Source: Macrostomum lignano (taxonomy: Eukaryota). From it: 64,000 nt of DNA. The position numbers were made by a program, and so were the translations under genes. The notes below the pieces were generated by a model. It had not been told where the DNA came from. It did not search any database and saw only the letters and a program-made list of their open reading frames with translations. Each line of letters opens with the position of its first letter. The first letter of the stretch is position 1. The DNA is taken from positions 3,573-67,572 of the forward strand of contig NIVC01003956.1 of the NCBI GenBank assembly GCA_002269645.1, given 5' to 3'. Shown here in pieces: positions 53,991-63,856 of this stretch.

Positions 53991-54417
53991 TGTGCATTTT
54001 TTGAGAGGATGATAAACGGTAACCCTGCCTCATTTCGCTACAAAGAAAATTTGTATACTCGTCAGACAAATGCTAGGGCTAATACTGCAGTATATGCTTG
54101 GGACACACAGAACATATATGAATTTTTATATGGTCATTAAATACAGCCAGCCCCCAGTCCCAACCAAGCAATCATGAAAAGTTATAGAAACACTATAAAA
54201 ACTATAGAAGACTGATACCAAGCGCCATGTACATGTGTTGTATCCCCCTTCCTCGCTGGCACGGCCGGGTTGGGTGACGGGTAGCGGTGTCGGGGTTCGG
54301 GTACTGGACTGCCCAGGGCTTACGAGCTCGATCGGCGACCCCGAGGCGTACGGACACTTCGGGGGGAGGTCAAGGTTGAGAAGTCGAGAGAGAGGGGAGG
54401 GGCGGCTGTGGGCGGGC

Positions 54418-54710
54418 GGCCACTCGACAGCCTGGTGAGTCAAGGAAGAGAGAGAGGGCTGCGGGCGGTCGGCCACTCGACAGCCTGGTGAGTCAAGGAA
54501 AAGAGAGAGGGCTGTGGGCGGGCGGCCACTCGACAGCCTGGTGAGTCAAGGAAGAGAGAGAGGGCTGCGGGCGGTCGGCCACTCGACAGCCTGGTGAGTC
54601 AAGGAAAAGAGAGAGGGCTGTGGGCGGGCGGCCACTCGACAGCCTGGTGAGTCAAGGAAGAGAGAGAGGGCTGCGGGCGGTCGGCCACTCGACAGCCTGG
54701 TGAGTCAGAC
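54418..54710. repeat. 53-bp tandem repeat inside the LTR (5 full + 1 partial here; 3 full + 1 variant at 62488-62685)
   Basis: GGCCACTCGACAGCCTGGTGAGTCAAGGAA(G/A)AGAGAGAGGGCTG(C/T)GGGCGG(T/G)C, alternating two variants; each has TGAGTCA. Confidence 0.92.
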
Positions 54711-54830
54711 TGAGGAGAGAGTGAGAGAGAGAGAGATCAGGAGAGCGACCCCGAGGAACACAGGCAATTGTCTCGACAGCTTACCGGGCCGGGTCGATTA
54801 TAGCACTCATACACGGGAAGGCCGATCGAT

Positions 54831-54873
54831 TGCAATAAATTGAGTCTTCGCAGTAAGAGACCGTCTTTACGGC
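54831..54873 (-). other. Spliced-leader exon-like sequence in the 3' LTR
   Basis: Minus strand GCCGTAAAGACGGTCTCTTACTGCGAAGACTCAATTTATTGCA; matches the M. lignano SL as I recall it, apart from the final TG. Confidence 0.85.
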
Positions 54874-55406
54874 TGATCGCTGGTCACGTTCGTTTATTTA
54901 TCGCGGTGGGCGCAAATGGGCGCAGGCACGGTGAGAAAAGGGGCGGGGTCTGAGCGTCGCCTTAAATAACGAGTAAAAAGGGGCAGGGGCGCAAACAAGG
55001 GGGGGGGAGAAAGGGCTTAAACAATGGAGCTGATTGACAGCTGATTGGCTGCGGCGAGGGGAGGGTGGAAGCGCGCACGGCCAGGGAGAGGGAGAGAGAG
55101 CAGAGGCCCAGCCAATCAGCACGGCTAGCCAAAGGGCTAAACAGCCAAGGCGAGAGAGAGAGAGAAAGAGAGCAGAGGCTCAGCCAAAGGGCTCATAGCT
55201 CCAGACTGGCTTGAGCCGGGGGGGGGGTAACAATAATCAACTACCAAAGTCAACAACTATCAAAGTGCACTTGCACCAGGGGAGCACTGTGACACAGGTC
55301 ACAACACCCTCCCCCCTAAAAAAAGAAAACGACGCGCTTTGACTGAATGAAAATGAAAAAAAAAATGTAATGAAATGAAACTGAATGAAAGAGACCAAGA
55401 GTGTCA

Positions 55407-55970
55407 GGCAGCGGCCGAGAGCGCAGGACAGGGGCCGAGGATGTCGGACAGGCCGAGAACACCGGGCACGGCCGAGAATGCCGGACTGTGGCCGAAAACG
55501 CCGGGCATGGCCGAGAATGCCGGACAGCGACCGAGAATGCCGGGCAGCGGCCGAGAACGCCTGGCATGGCCGAGAATGCCGGACAGCGGCCGAGAATGCC
55601 GGGCAGCGACCGAGAACGCCGGGCATGGCCGAGAACGCCGGGCATGGCCGAGAGTGCCGGACAGCGGCCGAGAATGCCGGACAGCGACCGAGAATGCCGG
55701 GCAGCGGCCGAGAACGCCTGGCATGGCCGAGAATGCCGGACAGCGGCCGAGAATGCCGGGCAGCGGCCGAGAATGCCGGGCATGGCCGAGAACGCCGGGC
55801 ATGGCCGAGAGTGCCGGACAGCGGCCGAGAATGCCGGGCAGCGGCCGAGAATGCCGGGCAGCGACCGAGAACGCCGGGCATGGCCGAGAGTGCCGGACAG
55901 CGGCCGAGAATGCCGGGCAGCGGCCGAGAATGCCGGGCAACGACCGAGAGCGCCGGGCATGGCCGAGAGT
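55407..55970. repeat. Array of 19/20-nt monomers in the element's 3' UTR
   Basis: CCGAGAATGCCGGACAGCGG, CCGAGAATGCCGGGCAGCGG and CCGAGAACGCCGGGCATGG units, roughly 28-30 monomers. Confidence 0.9.
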
Positions 55971-56101
55971 GTTCCCCGCCCTTCCTTCGGGGCCGCTCCC
56001 AGTGCCAAACAGAGGGATCACAACGACGATCAGAGGAGAGATGGGATGAAATGAAGGAGTGAAGGTCTCGTGCCCGCCCTGGCATCCTGCCCCAGAACCC
56101 C

Positions 56102-56983
56102 CTAGACCGCCACCTCCGCCGCCCGGCGCAACAACCCCAACACGCGTCCTCCGTCGATTAGTTCAAACTGAGGGATCGCAACACTCATGACGAACCGAGT
56201 GCTTCGCTTGAAGGCAGGCCGCCGCCAGACACGCCGAGCATGACCCCGACACTTGGCGCTGATGTCACGGAGAATGAACTTGACAGTCTGAGCCAAAAGC
56301 TCGGCGATTTCGCGTCGATGATCCAGCCGCTCGCTGCCGCACAGTCCCACCATTTCAGTCAAAAGCCGGAACATCGCAGCTGGACTCCCCGACAACAAAG
56401 CGTGCCGAAGCTCCGACCGGATTCGAGCTCTTCGCTGCGTTGCCTCCCCGCTCCAGGTGTATTCCACCTCGGTACTCGGCTCGCTCCTCATCAGCCACGC
56501 TGGCGACTCCCGTTGGTCGATGACGAGCTCCGGTTCGTCTTCTGACATCGAAGTTTCGCCGTCGGATTCATTCAAGAGCTCTTCTTCCTCTGACTGCGTG
56601 ATTTCACAGCAGCTCTGAGCAGTCTCCTCGCCGCCGCAACCACCACGCTCGCTTCCTTCCGACTCCCTGTCCTCGTCTGACTCTTCTGTTTCGTCTTCAA
56701 TCGTTACGACAAACTCCTCCGGGACGCACATCCCATCCGGCGGGACAAAATACCGGGCGCACTCGAGCGGGTTGCTAACGGCATCCTGCCCGAACCGGTA
56801 GTACAGCGCTCGTCGAAACGGACATAGCAGGACCGCACTCGCATGCTGCAGCCTCTGGAAATTCTCCGTTCCACCGGGTCCACACTTGTCGGGGTGCCGT
56901 CGCAGGCTCTCACGGCGGTACGCACGTCGCAGCTCCTCCTCCGTCGCGAAGGGGCTGACACCAAACTCGGCGTAGAGGTCCAT
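56102..56983 (-). CDS. J-domain (DnaJ/Hsp40-type) accessory protein, 293 aa, inside the retrotransposon
   Basis: MDLYAEFGVSPFATEEELRRAYRRESLRRHPDKCGPGGTENFQRLQHASAVLLCPFRRALYYRFG is a complete J domain with HPD. It is followed by an acidic linker and a helical C-terminus. ATG lies 16 nt after a TTGCAG acceptor. Confidence 0.9.
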   Translation of the reverse strand: MDLYAEFGVSPFATEEELRRAYRRESLRRHPDKCGPGGTENFQRLQHASAVLLCPFRRALYYRFGQDAVSNPLECARYFVPPDGMCVPEEFVVTIEDETEESDEDRESEGSERGGCGGEETAQSCCEITQSEEEELLNESDGETSMSEDEPELVIDQRESPAWLMRSEPSTEVEYTWSGEATQRRARIRSELRHALLSGSPAAMFRLLTEMVGLCGSERLDHRREIAELLAQTVKFILRDISAKCRGHARRVWRRPAFKRSTRFVMSVAIPQFELIDGGRVLGLLRRAAEVAV

Positions 56984-57189
56984 GCCCGGAAAGCAGTGCC
57001 TGCAACAACCACGACTCACTTTTGAGAGCAGGGCAATGGTTCCTTCGAGCCTCTTTGGGGCGCCGATCCTTCATCCCTGATGGCAGGGTTGGGCAGGTGG
57101 GACCTCCACTGACGGGCCTTAAGAGGGGAAATATATATTTTTGTTTGTGAAGCAGAGGCAATAACACGAGCCCAGTTTTCAATAACGCG

Positions 57190-57335
57190 GGTGATGACGC
57201 AGACGATGCTTCGAACCAAATGTTGATGACGCAGGTGATGACGCGGATGATGCTTCGAACCAAATGTTGATGACGCAGGTGATGACGCGGATGATGCTTC
57301 GAACCAAATGTTGATGACGCAGGTGATGACGCGAC
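57190..57335. repeat. 44-bp repeat, about 3 copies, between pol and the J-domain ORF
   Basis: GATGACGCAGGTGATGACGCGGATGATGCTTCGAACCAAATGTT. Confidence 0.9.
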
Positions 57336-57360
57336 ATTGCGCACGCACTCACGCCCGCTC

Positions 57361-60300
57361 TTAATAATAAACGGGCGTTCCATAACGCTGCGGAACCCTT
57401 CGATCCCTCTGGGGTCGACCTTCGATGACTTCAACTGGCGCTTCCGGCTGCGGCTGCACTCCTGGCTGCTGCACATCCATTGGTTCTCCCTCCTCTCGAA
57501 CCCGCCCGGAATGTCGCCACCATCGCTCCTCATCCTCATCGTCCGATTCCTGCGAGTCCTCCCTGACGGATTCCGTCTCTTGAGCAGGACCTGGGTGGTA
57601 CCTCCTTGGTGCAGGACGCCGAGGGCCACCGGTGCCGTCGACCGGGTACTTCCGGTACCGAGGCAGGAGGTTGTTAAAGTGCACCACCTTGATCGGCTTC
57701 CGTCGACCTTCCTGTCGAATCCTATAGCGCGTCTCCGACAGCTTCTCGAGAACTACGGCAGGTCCGGTCCAGGGTGAGTGGAGCTTCGCTTTGGCACCGG
57801 CCTTCAACACGGGGTTGTAGACGAACACCTCGTCGCCAGCCACGAATTCTCGACCCTTCACCTTCCGGTCGTACCAGTCTTTCTGCACTCGTTGATATGA
57901 CGTTATTCTCTCACGCACCACCCGATGGGCTTCCACGAGCGTCTCCCGCAGGTTCTGGACTTCCTCGCAGTACGGTTCGATGTCCAGTGGGCGCGCCACT
58001 CCCAAGTCAACTGGCAGAGACATCTCGCGACCATGCAGAAGGAAGAAGGGTGAGTAGCCGGTGCCGCGGTGCACACTGGAGCGATACGCCATGAGCGCCG
58101 GGGCAACGAATTCGTCCCACCGCCTCTGATCCGGCTCCTTCACCAGGTGCGCCCGGATCACTGCAGTCAGCGTCTTATTGAAGCTTTCCACTTGGCCGTT
58201 TCCAGAGGGGTGATAGGCGGTCGTACGCGTCTTTCGGATATTCAGACTTTCGCACAGCTGGCCGATCAATTGCGACTCGAAATTGGCTCCCTGATCCGAG
58301 TGGATTGTTCCTGGGGCTCCGTAGTGACAGACCCACTCCTCGAGCATTGCCCTTGCACAGGTGCTGGCCGTCTGATCTGGCACCGGTACTGCCACTGGCC
58401 ACTTACTGAACGCGTCCTGCATCGTCAGTATGTATTTGTTGCCTCGGACGCTGGTTGGCAGTGGTCCAATCAAATCCACCATCACTCTTTCAAACACATG
58501 GCTGCTGGGAATCGGCTCCAATGGGGCCTTCCGCCGCATCCCGGGCTTGCTCCGGTTACAGTCGTCACACCTTCGCACAAACTCCTCGACCTCTCGCTTC
58601 AAGCCGGGTCTCCAGAATCGGTTCCTGACTTTCTCCAGAGTCTTTGCTACGCCGAAGTGTCCACCTCCTGGTCCAGAGTGCAGCGTCTGCAGAGCGTCGG
58701 GGATCAATTTCTTCGGGAGAACAGCCCGCGGTGGGTGACGTCCCAGATCCTTGATGACGAGGGTGTTGTCCACAATTTCCAGCCGAGGCTTTTGTGCCCA
58801 GATGGCTCGGGTCGTTGGTGACGCACCCCGAGGTGGCTCTTCGTTTGCTCGGCCGGCGTGCATCGACTGGTAAACTGGAGCGATGTCGTTGTCCACAGCT
58901 TGTGCTGCTGCCAGCTCATCTCGGCTGAGCAACCCGAGCAGCGTCGTTACCCTGACCCCGGGGAGGTCATCAGTCCGGCACGACGGGCAGTTATCCATTT
59001 CGGGATGTCGTCGCGTCGGCTTGCGTGACAGCGCGTCCGCATTCTGATGACGCGCCCCTGGCCGATGCTCCACTGCGAAGTCGAATGGCGCCAACCTCTC
59101 CATCCACCGAGCCAACTGGCCTTCCGGCTGCCTCATACTTCGGAGCCACTGCAGACTTGCGTGGTCGGTGCGCACCCGGAACCTCCGGCCAAGTAGATAG
59201 TACCGGAACCTCTCTGCGAATGTCACCAGCGCCAGGAGCTCGATTCGTGTCGTGCAATAGTTGAATTCGGCCCCTTGCAGACGCCGACTCCCGTACGCAA
59301 TAACCCGCTCTGACCCGTCTTCTTGTACCTGCGACAAGACTGCTCCGAGACCCTGTCGGGTACTTCCATCGGTATCCAAGATGAACTCACCAGCCGTGGG
59401 GTCGAAGTTCGGGTAGGCCATCACGCGGCAACCGGTCAATTCTTCTTTCAGCTTTTTGAAGGCCTCATCGTGTTCCTCTCTCCAACTGAACGGCTTGTCT
59501 TTCTTTGTCAGATCAAAAAGTGGTGCAGCGACTATCGAGAATTCTGGTATGAAGTTTCGGTAGTAACCAGCCAGACCCAGGAACGACTGAAGGTCTTTTG
59601 CATTTCTTGGAATGCTCCAGTCACGGACTTCCTTGATCTTCTCCGGGTCGACATCGATTCCGTCCTTTGACACGACGTGGCCAAGGAATTTGACCTCATC
59701 GGCCAGGAATCTGCACTTAGATGGCTTTAGCCTCAAGTTGGCTGCGCGCAGGCGCTGGAATACCGCCTCGAGATTCGTTAGATGCTCGCTGACAGTTCGG
59801 GACCAAATGATGATATCGTCGATGTAGACGAGCGCCATTTTCCACAGAAGGTCGTGTAGTACCATATTCATCAACCTTGTGAATGTCGCCGGCGCATTGG
59901 TCAATCCGAAGGGCAGCACCTTGAACGCGAATTGCCCCCGATGCGGAATGACAAAAGCAGTCTTTTCTTGATCCTCCCTTTTGACCTTAACTTGCCAATA
60001 GCCGGAGCAAAGGTCGAGCGTCGAAAATACAGCCGCACCTCCGAGCGCTTCAAGTGCGTCATCGACACGCGGGATTGCTATGGCGTCCTTGACAGTTCGT
60101 TGATTCAACTCTCTGTAGTCGACACACAGTCGCAGTTCCCCATTCTTCTTACGGACACAGACCACTGGCGAACTCCACGGCGATTGGGTCGGTTCAATCA
60201 TCTTCGTTGCCAAAAGCTCGTCGATTTGTCGGTCGACTTCGCCGCGCCAATGTGGCGGTAGCCGTCGCGGAGGCTGTTTTACGGCTGTTCCGGTGGTCTC

Positions 60301-60453
60301 AATTTCATGCTGCACGATGTCCGTCGTCCCGAGGCGCGCTGTACTCTCTGCGAAAACATCTGCGTATCGATTCACCAATCTTAGGAAACTCGCTTTGTCT
60401 GCCCCCGTGAGCTGCTTGGAGCCGTGCTGGTTCAGTGCCGCCTCTGGTCCCAT
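57361..60453 (-). CDS. Gypsy pol: RT, RNase H, integrase (open for 1030 aa)
   Basis: LCVDYRELN, LPFGL, YIDD, ILDTDGS, TDHASL, HQNADALSR, HHCC, VDLIGP / SDQGANF / QVESFN (DDE), and SPWTGP (GPY/F). Confidence 0.97.
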   Translation of the reverse strand: MGPEAALNQHGSKQLTGADKASFLRLVNRYADVFAESTARLGTTDIVQHEIETTGTAVKQPPRRLPPHWRGEVDRQIDELLATKMIEPTQSPWSSPVVCVRKKNGELRLCVDYRELNQRTVKDAIAIPRVDDALEALGGAAVFSTLDLCSGYWQVKVKREDQEKTAFVIPHRGQFAFKVLPFGLTNAPATFTRLMNMVLHDLLWKMALVYIDDIIIWSRTVSEHLTNLEAVFQRLRAANLRLKPSKCRFLADEVKFLGHVVSKDGIDVDPEKIKEVRDWSIPRNAKDLQSFLGLAGYYRNFIPEFSIVAAPLFDLTKKDKPFSWREEHDEAFKKLKEELTGCRVMAYPNFDPTAGEFILDTDGSTRQGLGAVLSQVQEDGSERVIAYGSRRLQGAEFNYCTTRIELLALVTFAERFRYYLLGRRFRVRTDHASLQWLRSMRQPEGQLARWMERLAPFDFAVEHRPGARHQNADALSRKPTRRHPEMDNCPSCRTDDLPGVRVTTLLGLLSRDELAAAQAVDNDIAPVYQSMHAGRANEEPPRGASPTTRAIWAQKPRLEIVDNTLVIKDLGRHPPRAVLPKKLIPDALQTLHSGPGGGHFGVAKTLEKVRNRFWRPGLKREVEEFVRRCDDCNRSKPGMRRKAPLEPIPSSHVFERVMVDLIGPLPTSVRGNKYILTMQDAFSKWPVAVPVPDQTASTCARAMLEEWVCHYGAPGTIHSDQGANFESQLIGQLCESLNIRKTRTTAYHPSGNGQVESFNKTLTAVIRAHLVKEPDQRRWDEFVAPALMAYRSSVHRGTGYSPFFLLHGREMSLPVDLGVARPLDIEPYCEEVQNLRETLVEAHRVVRERITSYQRVQKDWYDRKVKGREFVAGDEVFVYNPVLKAGAKAKLHSPWTGPAVVLEKLSETRYRIRQEGRRKPIKVVHFNNLLPRYRKYPVDGTGGPRRPAPRRYHPGPAQETESVREDSQESDDEDEERWWRHSGRVREEGEPMDVQQPGVQPQPEAPVEVIEGRPQRDRRVPQRYGTPVYY

Positions 60454-61179
60454 GGATCGCAGCTGGGTCGTAAAACCGACGCTTGCTCTTCGATGCTGGC
60501 TACCAGAACCTCTTGAGCCGGATCTGATGGTCGAAACCAGCCGATGACAGCTCCCTTCCGCAGCCGCAGCTCGGAGTCCGTGACATTCGCGAAGTGAACT
60601 GGTAGGGTGTTGCCCTGCTGGATGAGGCAGACGCTCCTGGCTAGCATTGGTCTCTCATCGCTCTTCAGTTTTTCGTCTGGCTCGGCGACGCGCGAGCACT
60701 CCGGAATTCTGTGTCGCTGTTCTCCGAATCCTGGCTGAGACGGTCCGTTCGTGATTGGCCGGAATGATCAAGTTTTCGTTCAGGTACAACCGGCAGACGA
60801 CTGGTTTGTGCTTGGTCTCTCGGATTGGCACACGTGAACCGTTCACGCGGAAAACTCCTCCGGCGAAATCGATTTGGCACCGGTGGCGGCGTAAGAAGTC
60901 GGTGCCTAGCAACAGTTCGTAGCCGACCCCTTGGACCACCGCAATTGGCGTCTGTAAAGTTTCTGATCCGAACTGTAGGGGAAGCGACGCGCATCCTAAC
61001 ACATTCATGGGAGTTCCGTTCGCTGAGATCAGGTGGGTTTCCGAAGGGCTGAGTTCAACTCGAACCGACTTGCTCAACTGCCGCCAGGTCCTCTCGTTCA
61101 CCAGCGACATGACCGAGCCCGAATCCAACAGACACGGCAACTCAATCTCGCCAATTTTTACCGACACGTAGATTGACAC
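60432..61179 (-). CDS. Gypsy aspartic protease and spacer region, split by frameshifts
   Basis: LLDSGSVMSLV and LLLGTDFL motifs; frame changes near 60690 and 60450-60500. Confidence 0.85.
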
Positions 61180-61282
61180 GGGATTAAAAGCTGTTGCAGG
61201 TTGATCTCTATCTCTTGAGCAGTCCGCCGGACATCCTGCTGCACGTCGCTCCGGGCTGCATCTTCGTCTCGGGTTGGGGCCT

Positions 61283-62263
61283 CTACTGTCTCGGCGGAAC
61301 TCCCTCGCCCCTGCGGAAGTTCCCCTTGCCGTTTCCCTGTTGCTGACGGGTTGGGCAGTTAGTCGCGATGTGCCCTGGCTTGTTGCAGAAGAAGCAGCGA
61401 ATTCCTCCCGTTCGTCGAGGCTTCTGATGGTCGCCTTCGTCGGAGTCGGTCGGTCGAGCTGCGGCGCTGCTATGCGGTTCCGCTCTCAGCGACTCGAGCT
61501 GAACCACTTTGCCTTGAAGCTGCCTCACCAGTTTCTTCAACTCCTCGAGCTCTTTGTCCTTTTCTTGGGAGTAGGCTCCATCCTCCCGAGGCACAGATTC
61601 CGCCGCGCCGCTCACCACGAAGACTCCTCGGTGGCCGCTGCCAGTTGCTCCAGCCGATCTCGGTCCCTTCGCCGCCTTGGACGCCGCCTCGAGCTGCCTC
61701 ACCGCGCGTTGTGCTGCCACCAGACCTTCGGGCTGCTGCAGGTAGAGCTTCTCTCGCTGGAGGTCGGAGAGTCTCACCCCTTGCATGAAGCGATCCTTCG
61801 CGAGGTCGTCCTGCAGCTCGGCAGTTGCCGCCGGGTAGGCACAGCGCACCAGTTCAAGGAGAGCATCTGCGTAGGCCTCCAACGACTCGCCATCCTTCTG
61901 ATCTCGGGTTTTTAGCTCGACCTTGCTGTCCTGCTCTGTCCGGTACCGGGAGAAGCGAGCCTCCAACCGGGCGGTGAATCCCTCGTAGTCCAGCGGATCC
62001 ACAGGATCGTCGGGTCCCGGCAGGTTCAGATTATCGACCGCAGCGTACGCCGTAGCGAGATCCAGCATGCTCATCAAGTGCTCGCGGCGATGCTCCTCGT
62101 CAATCTCGGCGGAGTCGCAATAAGCGTTGAAAGAGCGCAGCCAGAGTCGAAAATTCATGCTTGACGTGTACTTCACGGGCTTCGGGAGTCTCGGTGGCTG
62201 GGCTGGTCCATCCGCTCGCAGACGCTCGGCTAGCAGCCGAATCAGTTCGTCCACATTCGCCAT
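61283..62263 (-). CDS. Gypsy gag, 326 aa
   Basis: Starts 25 nt after the PBS; CCHC knuckle CFFCNKPGHIATNC. Confidence 0.93.
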   Translation of the reverse strand: MANVDELIRLLAERLRADGPAQPPRLPKPVKYTSSMNFRLWLRSFNAYCDSAEIDEEHRREHLMSMLDLATAYAAVDNLNLPGPDDPVDPLDYEGFTARLEARFSRYRTEQDSKVELKTRDQKDGESLEAYADALLELVRCAYPAATAELQDDLAKDRFMQGVRLSDLQREKLYLQQPEGLVAAQRAVRQLEAASKAAKGPRSAGATGSGHRGVFVVSGAAESVPREDGAYSQEKDKELEELKKLVRQLQGKVVQLESLRAEPHSSAAARPTDSDEGDHQKPRRTGGIRCFFCNKPGHIATNCPTRQQQGNGKGNFRRGEGVPPRQ

Positions 62264-62287
62264 GACAGCTCACAAGCAAACTGAGCA

Positions 62288-62305
62288 GTCCCTGTTCGGG
62301 CGCCA
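62288..62305 (-). promoter_or_regulatory. Primer-binding site, tRNA-Lys(UUU)
   Basis: TGGCGCCCGAACAGGGAC, the canonical 18-nt Lys3-type PBS, 1 nt after the 5' LTR. Confidence 0.93.
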
Positions 62306-62813
62306 ATGTTGTATCCCCCTTCCTCGCTGGCACGGCCGGGTTGGGCGACGGGTAGCGGTGTCGGGGTTCGGGTACTGGACTGCCCAGGGCTTACGAGCTC
62401 GATCGGCGACCCCGAGGCGTACGGACACTTCGGGGGAGGTCAAGGTTGAGAAGTCGAGAGAGAGGGGAGGGGCGGCTGTGGGCGGGCGGCCACTCGACAG
62501 CCTGGTGAGTCAAGGAAGAGAGAGAGGGCTGCGGGCGGTCGGCCACTCGACAGCCTGGTGAGTCAAGGAAAAGAGAGAGGGCTGTGGGCGGGCGGCCACT
62601 CGACAGCCTGGTGAGTCAAGGAAGAGAGAGAGGGCTGCGGGCGGTCGGCTCGACAGCCTACGCTCACGAGCCTGGTGAGTCAGACTGAGAGAGAGAGAGA
62701 GAGATGAGAGAGAGAGAGATCAGGAGAGCGACCCCGAGGAACACAGGCAATTGTCTCGACAGCTTACCGGGCCGGGTCGATTATAGCACTCATACACGGG
62801 AAGGCCGATCGAT

Positions 62814-62856
62814 TGCAATAAATTGAGTCTTCGCAGTAAGAGACCGTCTTTACGGC
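62814..62856 (-). other. Spliced-leader exon-like sequence in the 5' LTR
   Basis: Same 43 nt as 54831-54873; 19 nt downstream of AATAAA (62881-62876) and 46 nt upstream of CCG|GTAAGC. Confidence 0.85.
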
Positions 62857-63552
62857 TGATCGCTGGTCACGTTCGTTTATTTATCGCGGTGGGCGCAAAT
62901 GGGCGCAGGCACGGTGAGAAAAGGGGCGGGGTCTGAGCGTCGCCTTAAATAACGAGTAAAAAGGGGCAGGGGCGCAAACAAGGGGGGGGAGAAAGGGCTT
63001 AAACAATGGAGCTGATTGACAGCTGATTGGCTGCGGCGAGGGGAGGGTGGAAGCGCGCACGGCCAGGGAGAGGGAGAGAGAGCAGAGGCCCAGCCAATCA
63101 GCACGGCTAGCCAAAGGGCTAAACAGCCAAGGCGAGAGAGAGAGAGAAAGAGAGCAGAGGCTCAGCCAAAGGGCTCATAGCTCCAGACTGGCTTGAGCCG
63201 GGGGGGGGGTAACAATAATCAACTACCAAAGTCAACAACTATCAAAGTGCACTTGCACCAGGGAGCACTGTGACACAGGTCACAACACATGTACAGTGGG
63301 AATTGGGTGATTTAGTTTTGTGTGCAGGGGACAGGAAACTCAGTCAGACCACGCGACTGTATGAAAACTGATTGAGTATCTCGGGACAAAGAAGCAACAG
63401 AAAAAGACGAGCGTCAACTATTCAATCATCATTTCTCTCTTTTCAAGCCTGCTTCAAAAATGAAAAATCGAACGTGTAAAAACATAACTTGTTTCGCACA
63501 AGACACCCACTAGCTCCATCTAAAAATGTTGTTTGAAATTCATGTTTCAGGC

Positions 63553-63856
63553 GAATATCTGGAAAGCGGATTTAATCTAGAGACACGATTCTTTCTGCGG
63601 GTGATACCGACTGGCACACTCTAATGATGTGTAGAGTCCCAAAAGTGAGGCTACTGATACAGCTTGGCAATTCCTGATTGATTTTCCCGGATTTGCCCAT
63701 TTGAATGCATTAGAATTTTCCCGAATCGCCGCCTTCGAATATCTAGAAAAGCGGATTAATCTAGAGACACGATTCTTTCTGCGGGTGGATACCGACTGGC
63801 ACACTCTAATGATGTGTAGAATCCCAAAGCTGAGGCTACTGATACAGCTTGGAAAT
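63553..63856 (+). repeat. About 118-bp direct duplication (63553-63670, 63738-63856)
   Basis: Near-identical GAATATCT...GATACAGCTTGG copies with small indels. Confidence 0.85.

What the first reader, a model, noticed from the sequence alone, without database searches (positions are those of the whole stretch)
62814..62856. LTR retrotransposon carrying the host spliced-leader exon in both LTRs (possible SL capture or mimicry)
Seen: the minus-strand 43-mer GCCGTAAAGACGGTCTCTTACTGCGAAGACTCAATTTATTGCA is identical in both LTRs (62856-62814, 54873-54831) and has the CCGT-AAAG-ACGG 5' hairpin. Recalled knowledge: the M. lignano SL exon is ...CCGTAAAGACGGTCTCTTACTGCGAAGACTCAATTTATTGCATG, and flatworm SL exons end in AUG. 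The LTR copy lacks that terminal AUG (GCAATC instead), which avoids an upstream start codon. Inference: the element's RNA could present a genome-encoded SL-like 5' end without trans-splicing and so use SL-dependent translation or stability machinery. I am not aware of this being described for LTR retrotransposons.
Basis: partly seen in the sequence, partly recalled or inferred. Interest (0 to 1): 0.95.

Follow-up and report, generated by a model that had tools for sequence, protein, structure and literature searches.

The report
Spliced-leader relic inside a flatworm retrotransposon LTR
A young Ty3/Gypsy retrotransposon of the flatworm Macrostomum lignano really does carry the first 43 of the 45 bases of the host's spliced-leader exon in both LTRs. 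It sits at the predicted poly(A) site (the R/U5 border), about 65 bases inside the transcript, so it looks like a scar of reverse transcription of a leader-bearing RNA and not a device that gives the element a leader-like 5' end.

Summary
The 43-mer occurs exactly twice in the window, once per LTR, in the sense orientation of a 9,052-bp Ty3/Gypsy element (54236-63287, minus strand). It equals nt 1-43 of the 45-nt Macrostomum SL exon. Homology to a genuine SL RNA gene (L008) starts exactly at SL nt 1 and stops 2 nt before the donor site. No SL promoter, intron or Sm site is present. That pattern points to RNA-templated capture by reverse transcriptase.

Four related elements that lack the SL, three of them from the same genome, show a shared LTR plan: CCAAT, then a TATTTAA box, then a single AATAAA, then a 5' splice site. 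In the window the SL sits 19 nt after the only AATAAA, right after a "CA", and about 95 nt after the conserved TATA box. It is therefore the first 43 nt of U5 and not the RNA 5' end.

Identity between the two LTRs says nothing about selection, because the LTRs differ by one substitution per kb. Only one insertion is known, seen in two duplicated genome blocks, so family-wide conservation could not be tested. Capture is supported; 5'-end mimicry is not. I found no description of this in the papers searched.

The parts
54236..63287 (-). Complete Ty3/Gypsy LTR retrotransposon (9,052 bp) of Macrostomum lignano, flanked by a 4-bp target-site duplication CATG (63288-63291 and 54232-54235)
   Evidence: LTR pair. 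Termini TGTTG...CAACA and the TSD. The pol is 100% identical to BOX15_Mlig001877g1. The same insertion with the same flank is in GCA_002269645.1 NIVC01003073.1 (L010).
62307..63287 (-). 5' LTR (981 bp)
54236..55306 (-). 3' LTR (1,071 bp). It is longer only because it holds extra copies of a 53-bp tandem repeat in U5.
62814..62856 (-). SL exon nt 1-43 in the 5' LTR (LTR positions 432-474), predicted to be the first 43 nt of U5
54831..54873 (-). SL exon nt 1-43 in the 3' LTR
62943..62951 (-). TATTTAAGG, the only TATA-like box of the LTR (3' LTR copy 54960-54968). It is preceded by CCAATCAG at 63023-63030. The predicted TSS is near 62921.
   Evidence: The block aligns with CATTTAAGG of the relative L001, and equivalent boxes are present in L012, L013 and L014.
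62876..62881 (-). AATAAA, the only poly(A) hexamer in the LTR (3' LTR copy 54893-54898). A 'CA' at 62858-62857, 19 nt downstream, is the predicted cleavage site and directly abuts SL nt 1.
62763..62768 (-). GGTAAG consensus 5' splice site 46 nt after the SL. It matches the 5' splice site found 29-66 nt after the hexamer in the SL-less relatives. It is probably the donor for a subgenomic ORF3 mRNA (inferred).
62288..62305 (-). Primer-binding site TGGCGCCCGAACAGGGAC. It is complementary to the 3' end of tRNA-Lys(UUU) and is the same 18-mer as the HIV-1 PBS (from memory).
   Evidence: The same PBS is in L001 and L002.
55307..55317 (-). Polypurine tract AGGGGGGAGGG abutting the 3' LTR
61283..62263 (-). 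gag (326 aa, CCHC zinc knuckle)
57361..61488 (-). pol frame (PR-RT-RNaseH-IN). It overlaps the gag end in another frame and is interrupted by one in-frame TGA at 60655-60657, which the duplicate locus L010 shares.
56102..57019 (-). ORF3 with a J-domain (DnaJ, HPD motif intact)
   Evidence: The same layout is found in L001 and L011.

Best explanation
The 43-mer is a relic of reverse transcription. While the cDNA that gave this insertion (or a recent ancestor of it) was being made, the element's reverse transcriptase copied an SL-bearing RNA up to its capped 5' end. The template was either the element's own RNA after SL trans-splicing in its leader, or a co-packaged SL RNA or SL-mRNA reached by template switching. 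The cDNA then continued on the 3' end of R at the poly(A) site. Normal completion of reverse transcription then placed U3-R-SL(1-43)-U5 in both LTRs. In the present element the SL is the first 43 nt of U5. It is transcribed once, about 65 nt downstream of the cap, as part of the 5' leader. It is most likely a neutral passenger. The terminal AUG is absent either because of the switch point or a 2-nt loss, or because uAUG-bearing leaders are disfavoured. What is shown: identity to SL nt 1-43, the exact boundaries, the sense orientation, the absence of SL-gene flanks, and the position relative to the LTR motifs. What is inferred: the TSS, the poly(A) site, the RT pathway and neutrality.
For: (1) There is an exact 43/43 match to SL nt 1-43. 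Local alignment to a genuine SL RNA gene (L008) covers precisely those 43 nt, with nothing upstream (promoter) or downstream (GTAAGA donor, Sm site). A boundary at RNA nt 1 is what RT run-off on a capped RNA gives. (2) The SL is in sense orientation within the element. (3) The 110 nt starting at the SL do not fold like an SL RNA (z +0.8, against -3.46 for L008), and no Rfam family matches. (4) LTR anatomy: one TATA-like box (62951) conserved with L001, one AATAAA (62881-62876), and the SL begins 19 nt after the hexamer, right after 'CA'. (5) Three SL-less families from the same genome share TATA, then 70-258 nt, then a single A[A/G]TAAA, then 29-66 nt, then GGT[A/G]AG. The SL sits inside this short hexamer-to-5'ss interval. 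(6) There is precedent that a Ty3/Gypsy RNA is SL trans-spliced in its 5' region: Cer1 in C. elegans (PMC3315495). Relict SLs in retro-copied genes are known from dinoflagellates (PMC3229502). (7) The family is low-copy. There is one protein cluster member, against 17 for a sister family. The only other copy found, L010, is the same insertion in a duplicated block. This is compatible with a one-off event.
Against: The TSS and poly(A) site are predicted from motifs only, and no transcript ends were available. A canonical first-strand transfer needs R homology. Joining the SL 5' end to the end of R needs a non-homologous or microhomology jump, and no poly(A) remnant is seen at the joint. A trans-spliced template should carry all 45 nt, so the missing TG needs an extra step. 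No good polypyrimidine/AG acceptor is visible just upstream. No SL-less parent copy was found, so whether U5 sequence was replaced or the SL was simply inserted cannot be told. ATAAATAAA, 20-28 nt upstream of SL nt 1, could act as a second TATA box. Neutrality is assumed and was not tested.
Confidence: 0.6

Rival explanations
1. Reader's hypothesis, SL mimicry. Transcription starts at or within a few nt of SL nt 1, using ATAAATAAA as the TATA box. The genomic RNA and mRNA then carry a genome-encoded SL-like 5' end and exploit SL-dependent translation or stability factors without trans-splicing.
For: ATAAATAAA lies 20-28 nt upstream of SL nt 1. The whole SL from nt 1, including the 5' mini-hairpin, is retained. 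The uAUG is absent, and the leader is ATG-poor.
Against: The same hexamer is the only poly(A) signal in the LTR, and none lies downstream of the SL. R would then be at most about 10 nt. A conserved CCAAT/TATTTAA promoter lies about 95 nt upstream. In L012 and L014, reading the hexamer as a TATA box would put the TSS on or beyond the conserved 5' splice site. A Pol II transcript gets an m7G cap, which does not need the SL/TMG-specific translation pathway (established knowledge). Only one insertion is known, so there is no sign of success after capture.
Confidence: 0.12
2. Captured by RT as in the best explanation, but since co-opted for an internal function. Candidates are a downstream element of the poly(A) site it abuts, a binding platform for SL-recognising proteins in the leader, or part of the leader exon of the spliced ORF3 (DnaJ) mRNA.
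For: The SL directly follows the predicted cleavage site and contains GGTCTCTT (U/GU-rich). It lies in the exon upstream of the conserved 5' splice site, so it would be in both genomic and subgenomic RNAs.
Against: The SL-less relatives manage with unrelated sequence at this position. There is no conservation data. The idea is pure inference.
Confidence: 0.15
3. DNA-level capture. A piece of an SL RNA gene, or an SL cDNA, was inserted by recombination or end-joining into one LTR and then spread to both LTRs in the next retrotransposition cycle.
For: It would also give the SL in both LTRs. Cassandra TRIMs show that host small-RNA genes can reside in LTRs (PMC7215508).
Against: Homology stops exactly at the RNA 5' end and contains no gene flank, donor site or intron. 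The sense orientation and the position exactly at the poly(A) site would both be coincidences.
Confidence: 0.05
4. Chance similarity or assembly artefact.
For: none
Against: A 43/43 match has 0 expected by shuffling. It is present in both LTRs and in an independently assembled contig of GCA_002269645.1.
Confidence: 0.01

Closest known systems
Relict spliced leaders in dinoflagellate retrogenes (mRNA recycling; Slamovits and Keeling, as described in PMC3229502)
   Same: A genome-encoded SL copy without SL-intron sequence, explained by reverse transcription of an SL-bearing RNA and reintegration.
   Different: There the relic sits at the 5' end of a retro-copied cellular gene, is truncated at an AG by renewed trans-splicing, and is common. 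Here it is inside the LTR of an LTR retrotransposon at the R/U5 border, runs from nt 1 to nt 43, and is known from one insertion.
Cer1, the Ty3/Gypsy element of C. elegans, whose RNA is SL1 trans-spliced (PMC3315495)
   Same: A Ty3/Gypsy element in a trans-splicing host. SL addition occurs in the 5' region of element RNA, which shows that SL-bearing element RNAs exist.
   Different: In Cer1 the SL is added post-transcriptionally to the 2.4-kb spliced mRNA only and is not encoded in the LTR.
Cassandra TRIM retrotransposons with 5S RNA in both LTRs (PMC7215508)
   Same: Host small-RNA sequence resides in both LTRs of an LTR retrotransposon.
   Different: Cassandra carries a whole 5S unit with a Pol III promoter and terminator, conserved across vascular plants. 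Here only the 43-nt exon part is present, with no promoter of its own, no Sm site, and unknown conservation.
U6/L1 and other chimeric retrocopies made by RT template switching to small nuclear RNAs (own knowledge; a tripartite LINE-mediated example is listed, PMC2104539)
   Same: RT switches to an abundant small RNA and copies it to its 5' end, which fuses its sequence to the retro-copied RNA.
   Different: Those are products of non-LTR (LINE) RT and are dead pseudogenes. Here the product is a complete LTR element.
SL-gene-specific non-LTR retrotransposons (SLACS/CZAR of trypanosomatids, NeSL-1 of nematodes; own knowledge)
   Same: A physical association between a retrotransposon and SL sequence.
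   Different: Those elements insert into SL RNA genes. Here the SL exon is inside the element, and the flanks are not an SL gene (CATG TSD).
HIV-1-type LTR with the poly(A) signal inside R (own knowledge)
   Same: The TATA box is in U3, AAUAAA is in R, cleavage is about 20 nt downstream at the R/U5 border, and the PBS is of the tRNA-Lys3 type.
   Different: This is only an architectural analogy used to read the LTR. It is a different family, and there is no SL.

Membership tests
Ty3/Gypsy (Metaviridae) LTR retrotransposon | Direct long terminal repeats with TG...CA ends, flanked by a short target-site duplication | tested here: met
   LTRs of 981 and 1,071 bp, TGTTG...CAACA termini, TSD CATG
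Ty3/Gypsy (Metaviridae) LTR retrotransposon | PBS next to the 5' LTR and PPT next to the 3' LTR | tested here: met
   TGGCGCCCGAACAGGGAC at 62305-62288 and AGGGGGGAGGG at 55317-55307
Ty3/Gypsy (Metaviridae) LTR retrotransposon | gag with a CCHC knuckle; pol domain order PR-RT-RNaseH-IN | tested here: met
   Pfam zf-CCHC, gag-asp_proteas, RVT_1, RT_RNaseH, Integrase_H2C2, rve and Integrase_p58_C in that order
Flatworm SL RNA gene | Complete SL exon ending in AUG, followed at once by a GU donor site | tested here: not met
   Only nt 1-43 are present, followed by ATCGATC. L008 shows the real arrangement ...GCATG|GTAAGA.
Flatworm SL RNA gene | Sm-binding site and the hairpins of the intron half, with a stable SL RNA fold | tested here: not met
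   The LTR 110-mer gives z +0.8 and has no Sm-like motif. L008 gives z -3.46 with AUUUUUAG between hairpins.
Flatworm SL RNA gene | Own upstream promoter shared with other SL genes | tested here: not met
   No similarity upstream of nt 1 between the LTR and the L008 gene. The L008 species may differ from M. lignano.
SL-relic retrocopy (dinoflagellate type) | Genome-encoded SL without SL-intron sequence, derived from an RNA | tested here: met
   Boundaries at SL nt 1 and nt 43, with no gene flanks
SL-relic retrocopy (dinoflagellate type) | The relic lies at the 5' end of the retro-copied transcript unit | tested here: inconclusive
   It lies at the start of U5, the part of the LTR that derives from the 5' portion of the template RNA. 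The template's 5' end cannot be observed.
Cassandra-like LTR carrying a host small-RNA gene | Small-RNA sequence in both LTRs | tested here: met
Cassandra-like LTR carrying a host small-RNA gene | Independent promoter and terminator of the small RNA retained | tested here: not met
   Only the exon nt 1-43 are present
Cassandra-like LTR carrying a host small-RNA gene | Conserved across the family and across species | not testable with these tools
   Only one insertion was found, as two duplicated blocks. The eukaryote genome could not be searched by BLASTN.
   Motif-based prediction places the TSS about 65 nt upstream. No transcript data were accessible.

The most novel reading that the evidence does not exclude
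The captured leader is used. A fraction of element transcripts start at or near SL nt 1, from the ATAAATAAA box, or the internal SL recruits SL-recognising factors. The retrotransposon RNA would then pass as a trans-spliced host mRNA for translation, stability or escape from silencing, without trans-splicing. That would be a new kind of host mimicry by a retroelement.
Probability: 0.1. Interest if true: 0.85.

Novelty: new variant of a known kind. Interest (0 to 1): 0.45.

Why it matters
If the RT-relic reading is right, this is direct genomic evidence of two things. First, SL-bearing RNA can enter the replication cycle of an LTR retrotransposon in a trans-splicing animal. Second, a non-canonical first-strand transfer at the poly(A) site can still give a complete element with two LTRs. 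It extends the 'relict SL' phenomenon, so far described for dinoflagellate retrogenes, to a metazoan LTR element. It also gives a datable marker for such events. There is a practical point as well. Genome-encoded SL copies can mislead SL-based annotation: SL-containing reads can map here without trans-splicing, and the 100%-match 35-mer search used to find SL genes (PMC8629364) would miss this copy. If the mimicry reading were right, it would be a new host-mimicry strategy, testable with existing M. lignano transgenesis.

Tried and rejected
- **Family-wide conservation test.** The gag search found only three relatives at 44-45% identity from other organisms. The pol search found one 100% hit, which is the same insertion in a duplicated block, and then only 50-54% relatives.
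- **Metagenome scan with an SL 24-mer.** It returned six contigs: five trans-spliced mRNAs and one SL RNA gene. None was LTR-like.
- **Rfam on the LTR and on the SL gene.** No family matched.
- **LTR alignment to the distant relative L001.** Only the TATA block and the PBS align, so the pre-capture sequence could not be reconstructed.
- **R duplication flanking the SL.** This would be expected if RT had switched from the genomic RNA 5' end to SL RNA. No similarity was found between the sequences before and after the SL beyond 'CGATC'.
- **Poly(A) distance calibration on the metatranscript contigs.** They have no tails.
- **Bacterial-type promoter/terminator scan and tRNA scan.** Uninformative.
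- **Wasik et al. 2015.** The paper could not be retrieved.
- **'Identical in both LTRs' as evidence of selection.** Rejected, because the LTRs are near-identical throughout.

Full report
**Observation.** The 43-mer GCCGTAAAGACGGTCTCTTACTGCGAAGACTCAATTTATTGCA occurs on the minus strand at 62856-62814 and 54873-54831. Both copies are exact. No further match exists at up to 3 mismatches, and none is expected in shuffles. A 19-nt core gives the same two hits. What follows is ATCGATC.

The published M. lignano SL is the 35-mer CGGTCTCTTACTGCGAAGACTCAATTTATTGCATG (PMC8629364). The SL assembled from transcripts of M. cliftonense is the 45-mer GCCGTAAAGACGGTCTCTTACTGCGAAGACTCAATTTATTGCATG, and that of M. 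hystrix is the same minus 2 nt at the 5' end (PMC10468722 Table S3). The window's 43-mer is therefore nt 1-43 of the full SL exon and lacks only the terminal TG.

**The element.** The two copies sit at the same position (432-474) of two direct repeats. These are 63287-62307 (981 bp) and 55306-54236 (1,071 bp). They differ by one substitution, some single-base indels, and the copy number of a 53-bp tandem repeat.

- The repeats begin TGTTG and end CAACA, and they are flanked by a CATG duplication.
- The 5' repeat is followed by TGGCGCCCGAACAGGGAC, a tRNA-Lys-type primer-binding site.
- The 3' repeat is preceded by AGGGGGGAGGG.
- Between the repeats, all on the minus strand, lie gag with a CCHC knuckle, a pol frame with protease, RT, RNase H and integrase in Ty3/Gypsy order, and a third ORF with a J-domain.
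- The pol frame has one in-frame TGA at 60657-60655.

The pol is 100% identical to M. lignano protein BOX15_Mlig001877g1. Its contig (L010, GCA_002269645.1 NIVC01003073.1) holds the same insertion with the same upstream flank. Substitution divergence is 0.14% in the flank and about 0.45% inside the element. L010 also has the SL and the TGA. L010 is therefore a duplicated block or haplotype and not an independent copy.

The protein cluster of this pol has one member, against 17 for a sister family. The next M. lignano relatives are 50-54% identical. Because the LTRs are almost identical throughout, identity of the 43-mer between them says nothing about selection.

**What the 43-mer is not.** A metagenome scan with an SL 24-mer returned five contigs that begin with the SL, read ...TTGCATG, and then continue into coding sequence. 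These are trans-spliced mRNAs. It also returned one contig, L008, with a genuine SL RNA gene. In that gene the 45-nt exon is followed by GTAAGA, a hairpin, AUUUUUAG and another hairpin. This 105-nt RNA folds well (z -3.46).

The 110 nt starting at the LTR's SL do not fold well (z +0.8) and have no Sm-like site. Local alignment of the LTR against the gene covers exactly SL nt 1-43 and nothing on either side. Rfam has no matching family. The LTR therefore holds neither an SL RNA gene nor a gene fragment with flanks. It holds the transcribed exon only, starting at the RNA's first nucleotide, in the sense orientation of the element. That is the signature of copying from RNA by a reverse transcriptase that ran to the capped end.

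**Where it sits in the LTR.**

- The 981-bp LTR has a single TATA-like box, TATTTAAGG at 62951-62943, with CCAATCAG at 63030-63023 upstream.
- It has a single AATAAA at 62881-62876, and no ATTAAA, AGTAAA or TATAAA.
- The TATA block is one of only two LTR stretches that still align with the distant relative L001. The other is the PBS.
- Three SL-less elements of related families from the same genome were examined: L012, L013 and L014. All have LTR pairs of at least 99.7% identity and no SL.
- These three show the same plan. ATTGG/CCAAT is followed by [C/T]ATTTA[A/T]. One A[A/G]TAAA lies 106, 114 and 258 nt downstream of that box. A consensus 5' splice site GGT[A/G]AG lies 38, 66 and 29 nt after the hexamer start.
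- In the window the hexamer is 70 nt after the TATA box. The splice site, at 62768-62763, is 113 nt after the hexamer, or 70 nt without the SL.

Reading the hexamer as the poly(A) signal inside R fits all four families. This is the arrangement known from HIV-1 (own knowledge). Reading it as a TATA box would put the start site on or beyond the splice donor in L012 and L014.

Cleavage is at the CA at 62858-62857, 19 nt after the hexamer. The SL begins at the very next base. The SL is therefore predicted to be the first 43 nt of U5, about 65 nt inside the transcript, and absent from the RNA's 3' end.

**Mechanism.** U5 derives from the 5' part of the template RNA, and U3-R derives from its 3' part. 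An LTR of the form U3-R-SL-U5 is what results if minus-strand strong-stop DNA ended on an SL instead of on R and then continued at the 3' end of R. Two routes give such a cDNA.

- **Route (a).** The template was element RNA that had been SL trans-spliced in its leader. Trans-splicing of a Ty3/Gypsy RNA in its 5' region is documented for Cer1 (PMC3315495), and 30% of M. lignano genes are trans-spliced (PMC8629364).
- **Route (b).** RT switched at the R/U5 border to a co-packaged SL RNA or SL-mRNA. The 43-mer is flanked by a CA/CA microhomology (GATCA|GCCG...TTGCA|ATC).

Both routes need a first-strand transfer without R homology, and neither leaves the poly(A) remnant one might expect. Route (a) needs an extra 2-nt loss, and route (b) explains the missing TG directly. 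Without an SL-less parent copy I cannot choose between them. The shared core, RNA-templated capture, is well supported. The details are inference.

**The missing AUG.** From the predicted TSS to the gag ATG (658 nt) there is one ATG against 4.1 expected (P 0.04). The leaders of L001 and L012 have none, against 2.2 and 3.1 expected (P 0.04 and 0.02). Leaders in this clade thus seem purged of uAUGs. A copy that kept the SL's AUG may have been disfavoured.

**Function.** Nothing here requires a function. The SL-less relatives have unrelated sequence at this position, and only one insertion is known. The mimicry idea needs a TSS at 62856. ATAAATAAA lies 20-28 nt upstream of that position, so the idea cannot be excluded. 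It would, however, leave an R of a few nucleotides and ignore the conserved upstream promoter. A Pol II transcript would also be m7G-capped and so would not need the SL/TMG translation pathway (established knowledge of nematode and flatworm SL biology). I put mimicry at about 0.1. Other co-option, such as a poly(A) downstream element or part of the leader exon, I put at about 0.15.

**Comparison with what is known.** Relict SLs in retro-copied genes are known from dinoflagellates (PMC3229502). Host small-RNA genes in both LTRs are known from Cassandra TRIMs (PMC7215508). SL trans-splicing of a Gypsy RNA is known from Cer1. Retrotransposons that insert into SL genes are known from trypanosomatids and nematodes (own knowledge). 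Three full-text searches and the recent M. lignano LTR-retrotransposon paper, which never mentions trans-splicing (PMC12801592), gave no description of an SL exon inside an LTR. The SL-gene search of PMC8629364 required 100% matches to the 35-mer ending in ATG and would have missed this copy. I therefore class it as a new variant of known kinds: an SL relic, inside an LTR retrotransposon.

**Verdict.** 'Capture' is supported. '5'-end mimicry' is not supported by the LTR anatomy but remains untested by transcript data. Interest is moderate. It is a neat and apparently undescribed molecular fossil with a clear and cheap set of decisive tests, but it is known from a single insertion and is most likely neutral.

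Noticed in passing
window 56102-57019 (minus strand); L001 5865-6659; L011 5987-7534: A third ORF downstream of pol encodes a J-domain (DnaJ) protein with an intact HPD motif. The same gag-pol-DnaJ layout is found in a distant metagenomic relative and in a second M. lignano family, so it is a lineage feature and not a one-off capture. One literature search found no description of J-domain ORFs in Ty3/Gypsy elements. This may deserve its own look.
   Followed up: partly
window 62763-62768 and 54780-54785; L012 8427-8432; L013 7211-7216; L014 7589-7594: All four related M. lignano families have a consensus 5' splice site (GGTAAG or GGTGAG) 29-70 nt after the single poly(A) hexamer of the LTR, that is in U5. 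It is probably the donor for a subgenomic ORF3 mRNA. Its closeness to the poly(A) site recalls U1-mediated suppression of 5' LTR polyadenylation.
   Followed up: partly
window 60655-60657 (minus strand): There is a single in-frame TGA between protease and RT in an otherwise open pol frame of about 1,370 codons. The duplicate locus L010 shares it, and the relative L001 lacks it. It is either a nonsense mutation or a read-through site.
   Followed up: partly
window 62379-62702 and 54309-54791: A 53-bp tandem repeat in U5 differs in copy number between the two LTRs, and L010 shows indels in the same region.
   Followed up: no
window 55387-55999 and 57182-57333: There are dense 19/20/39-nt tandem repeats (GGCCGAGAATGCCGGRCAGC-like) between ORF3 and the PPT. 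Three 44-bp repeats lie between pol and ORF3.
   Followed up: no
window 63603-63856; L011 15203-15340: A 69-nt unit is repeated 185 bp apart in the upstream flank. It also matches (88%) an unrelated M. lignano contig, so it is probably another dispersed repeat.
   Followed up: no
L008 625-733 (JGI contig Ga0302322_100095745); L004-L007 and L009 (Ga0316592): Environmental data sets contain a Macrostomum-type SL RNA gene and SL-trans-spliced mRNAs with an SL identical to that of M. lignano and M. cliftonense. The SL is thus invariant across whatever macrostomids these are.
   Followed up: partly
literature: PMC8629364: The 'SL RNA' locus of the first M. lignano genome paper was later found to map to the 5' end of a protein-coding gene (Mlig013257.g1). 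That is another genome-encoded SL copy outside SL RNA genes, and it might be a second relic of the same kind.
   Followed up: no
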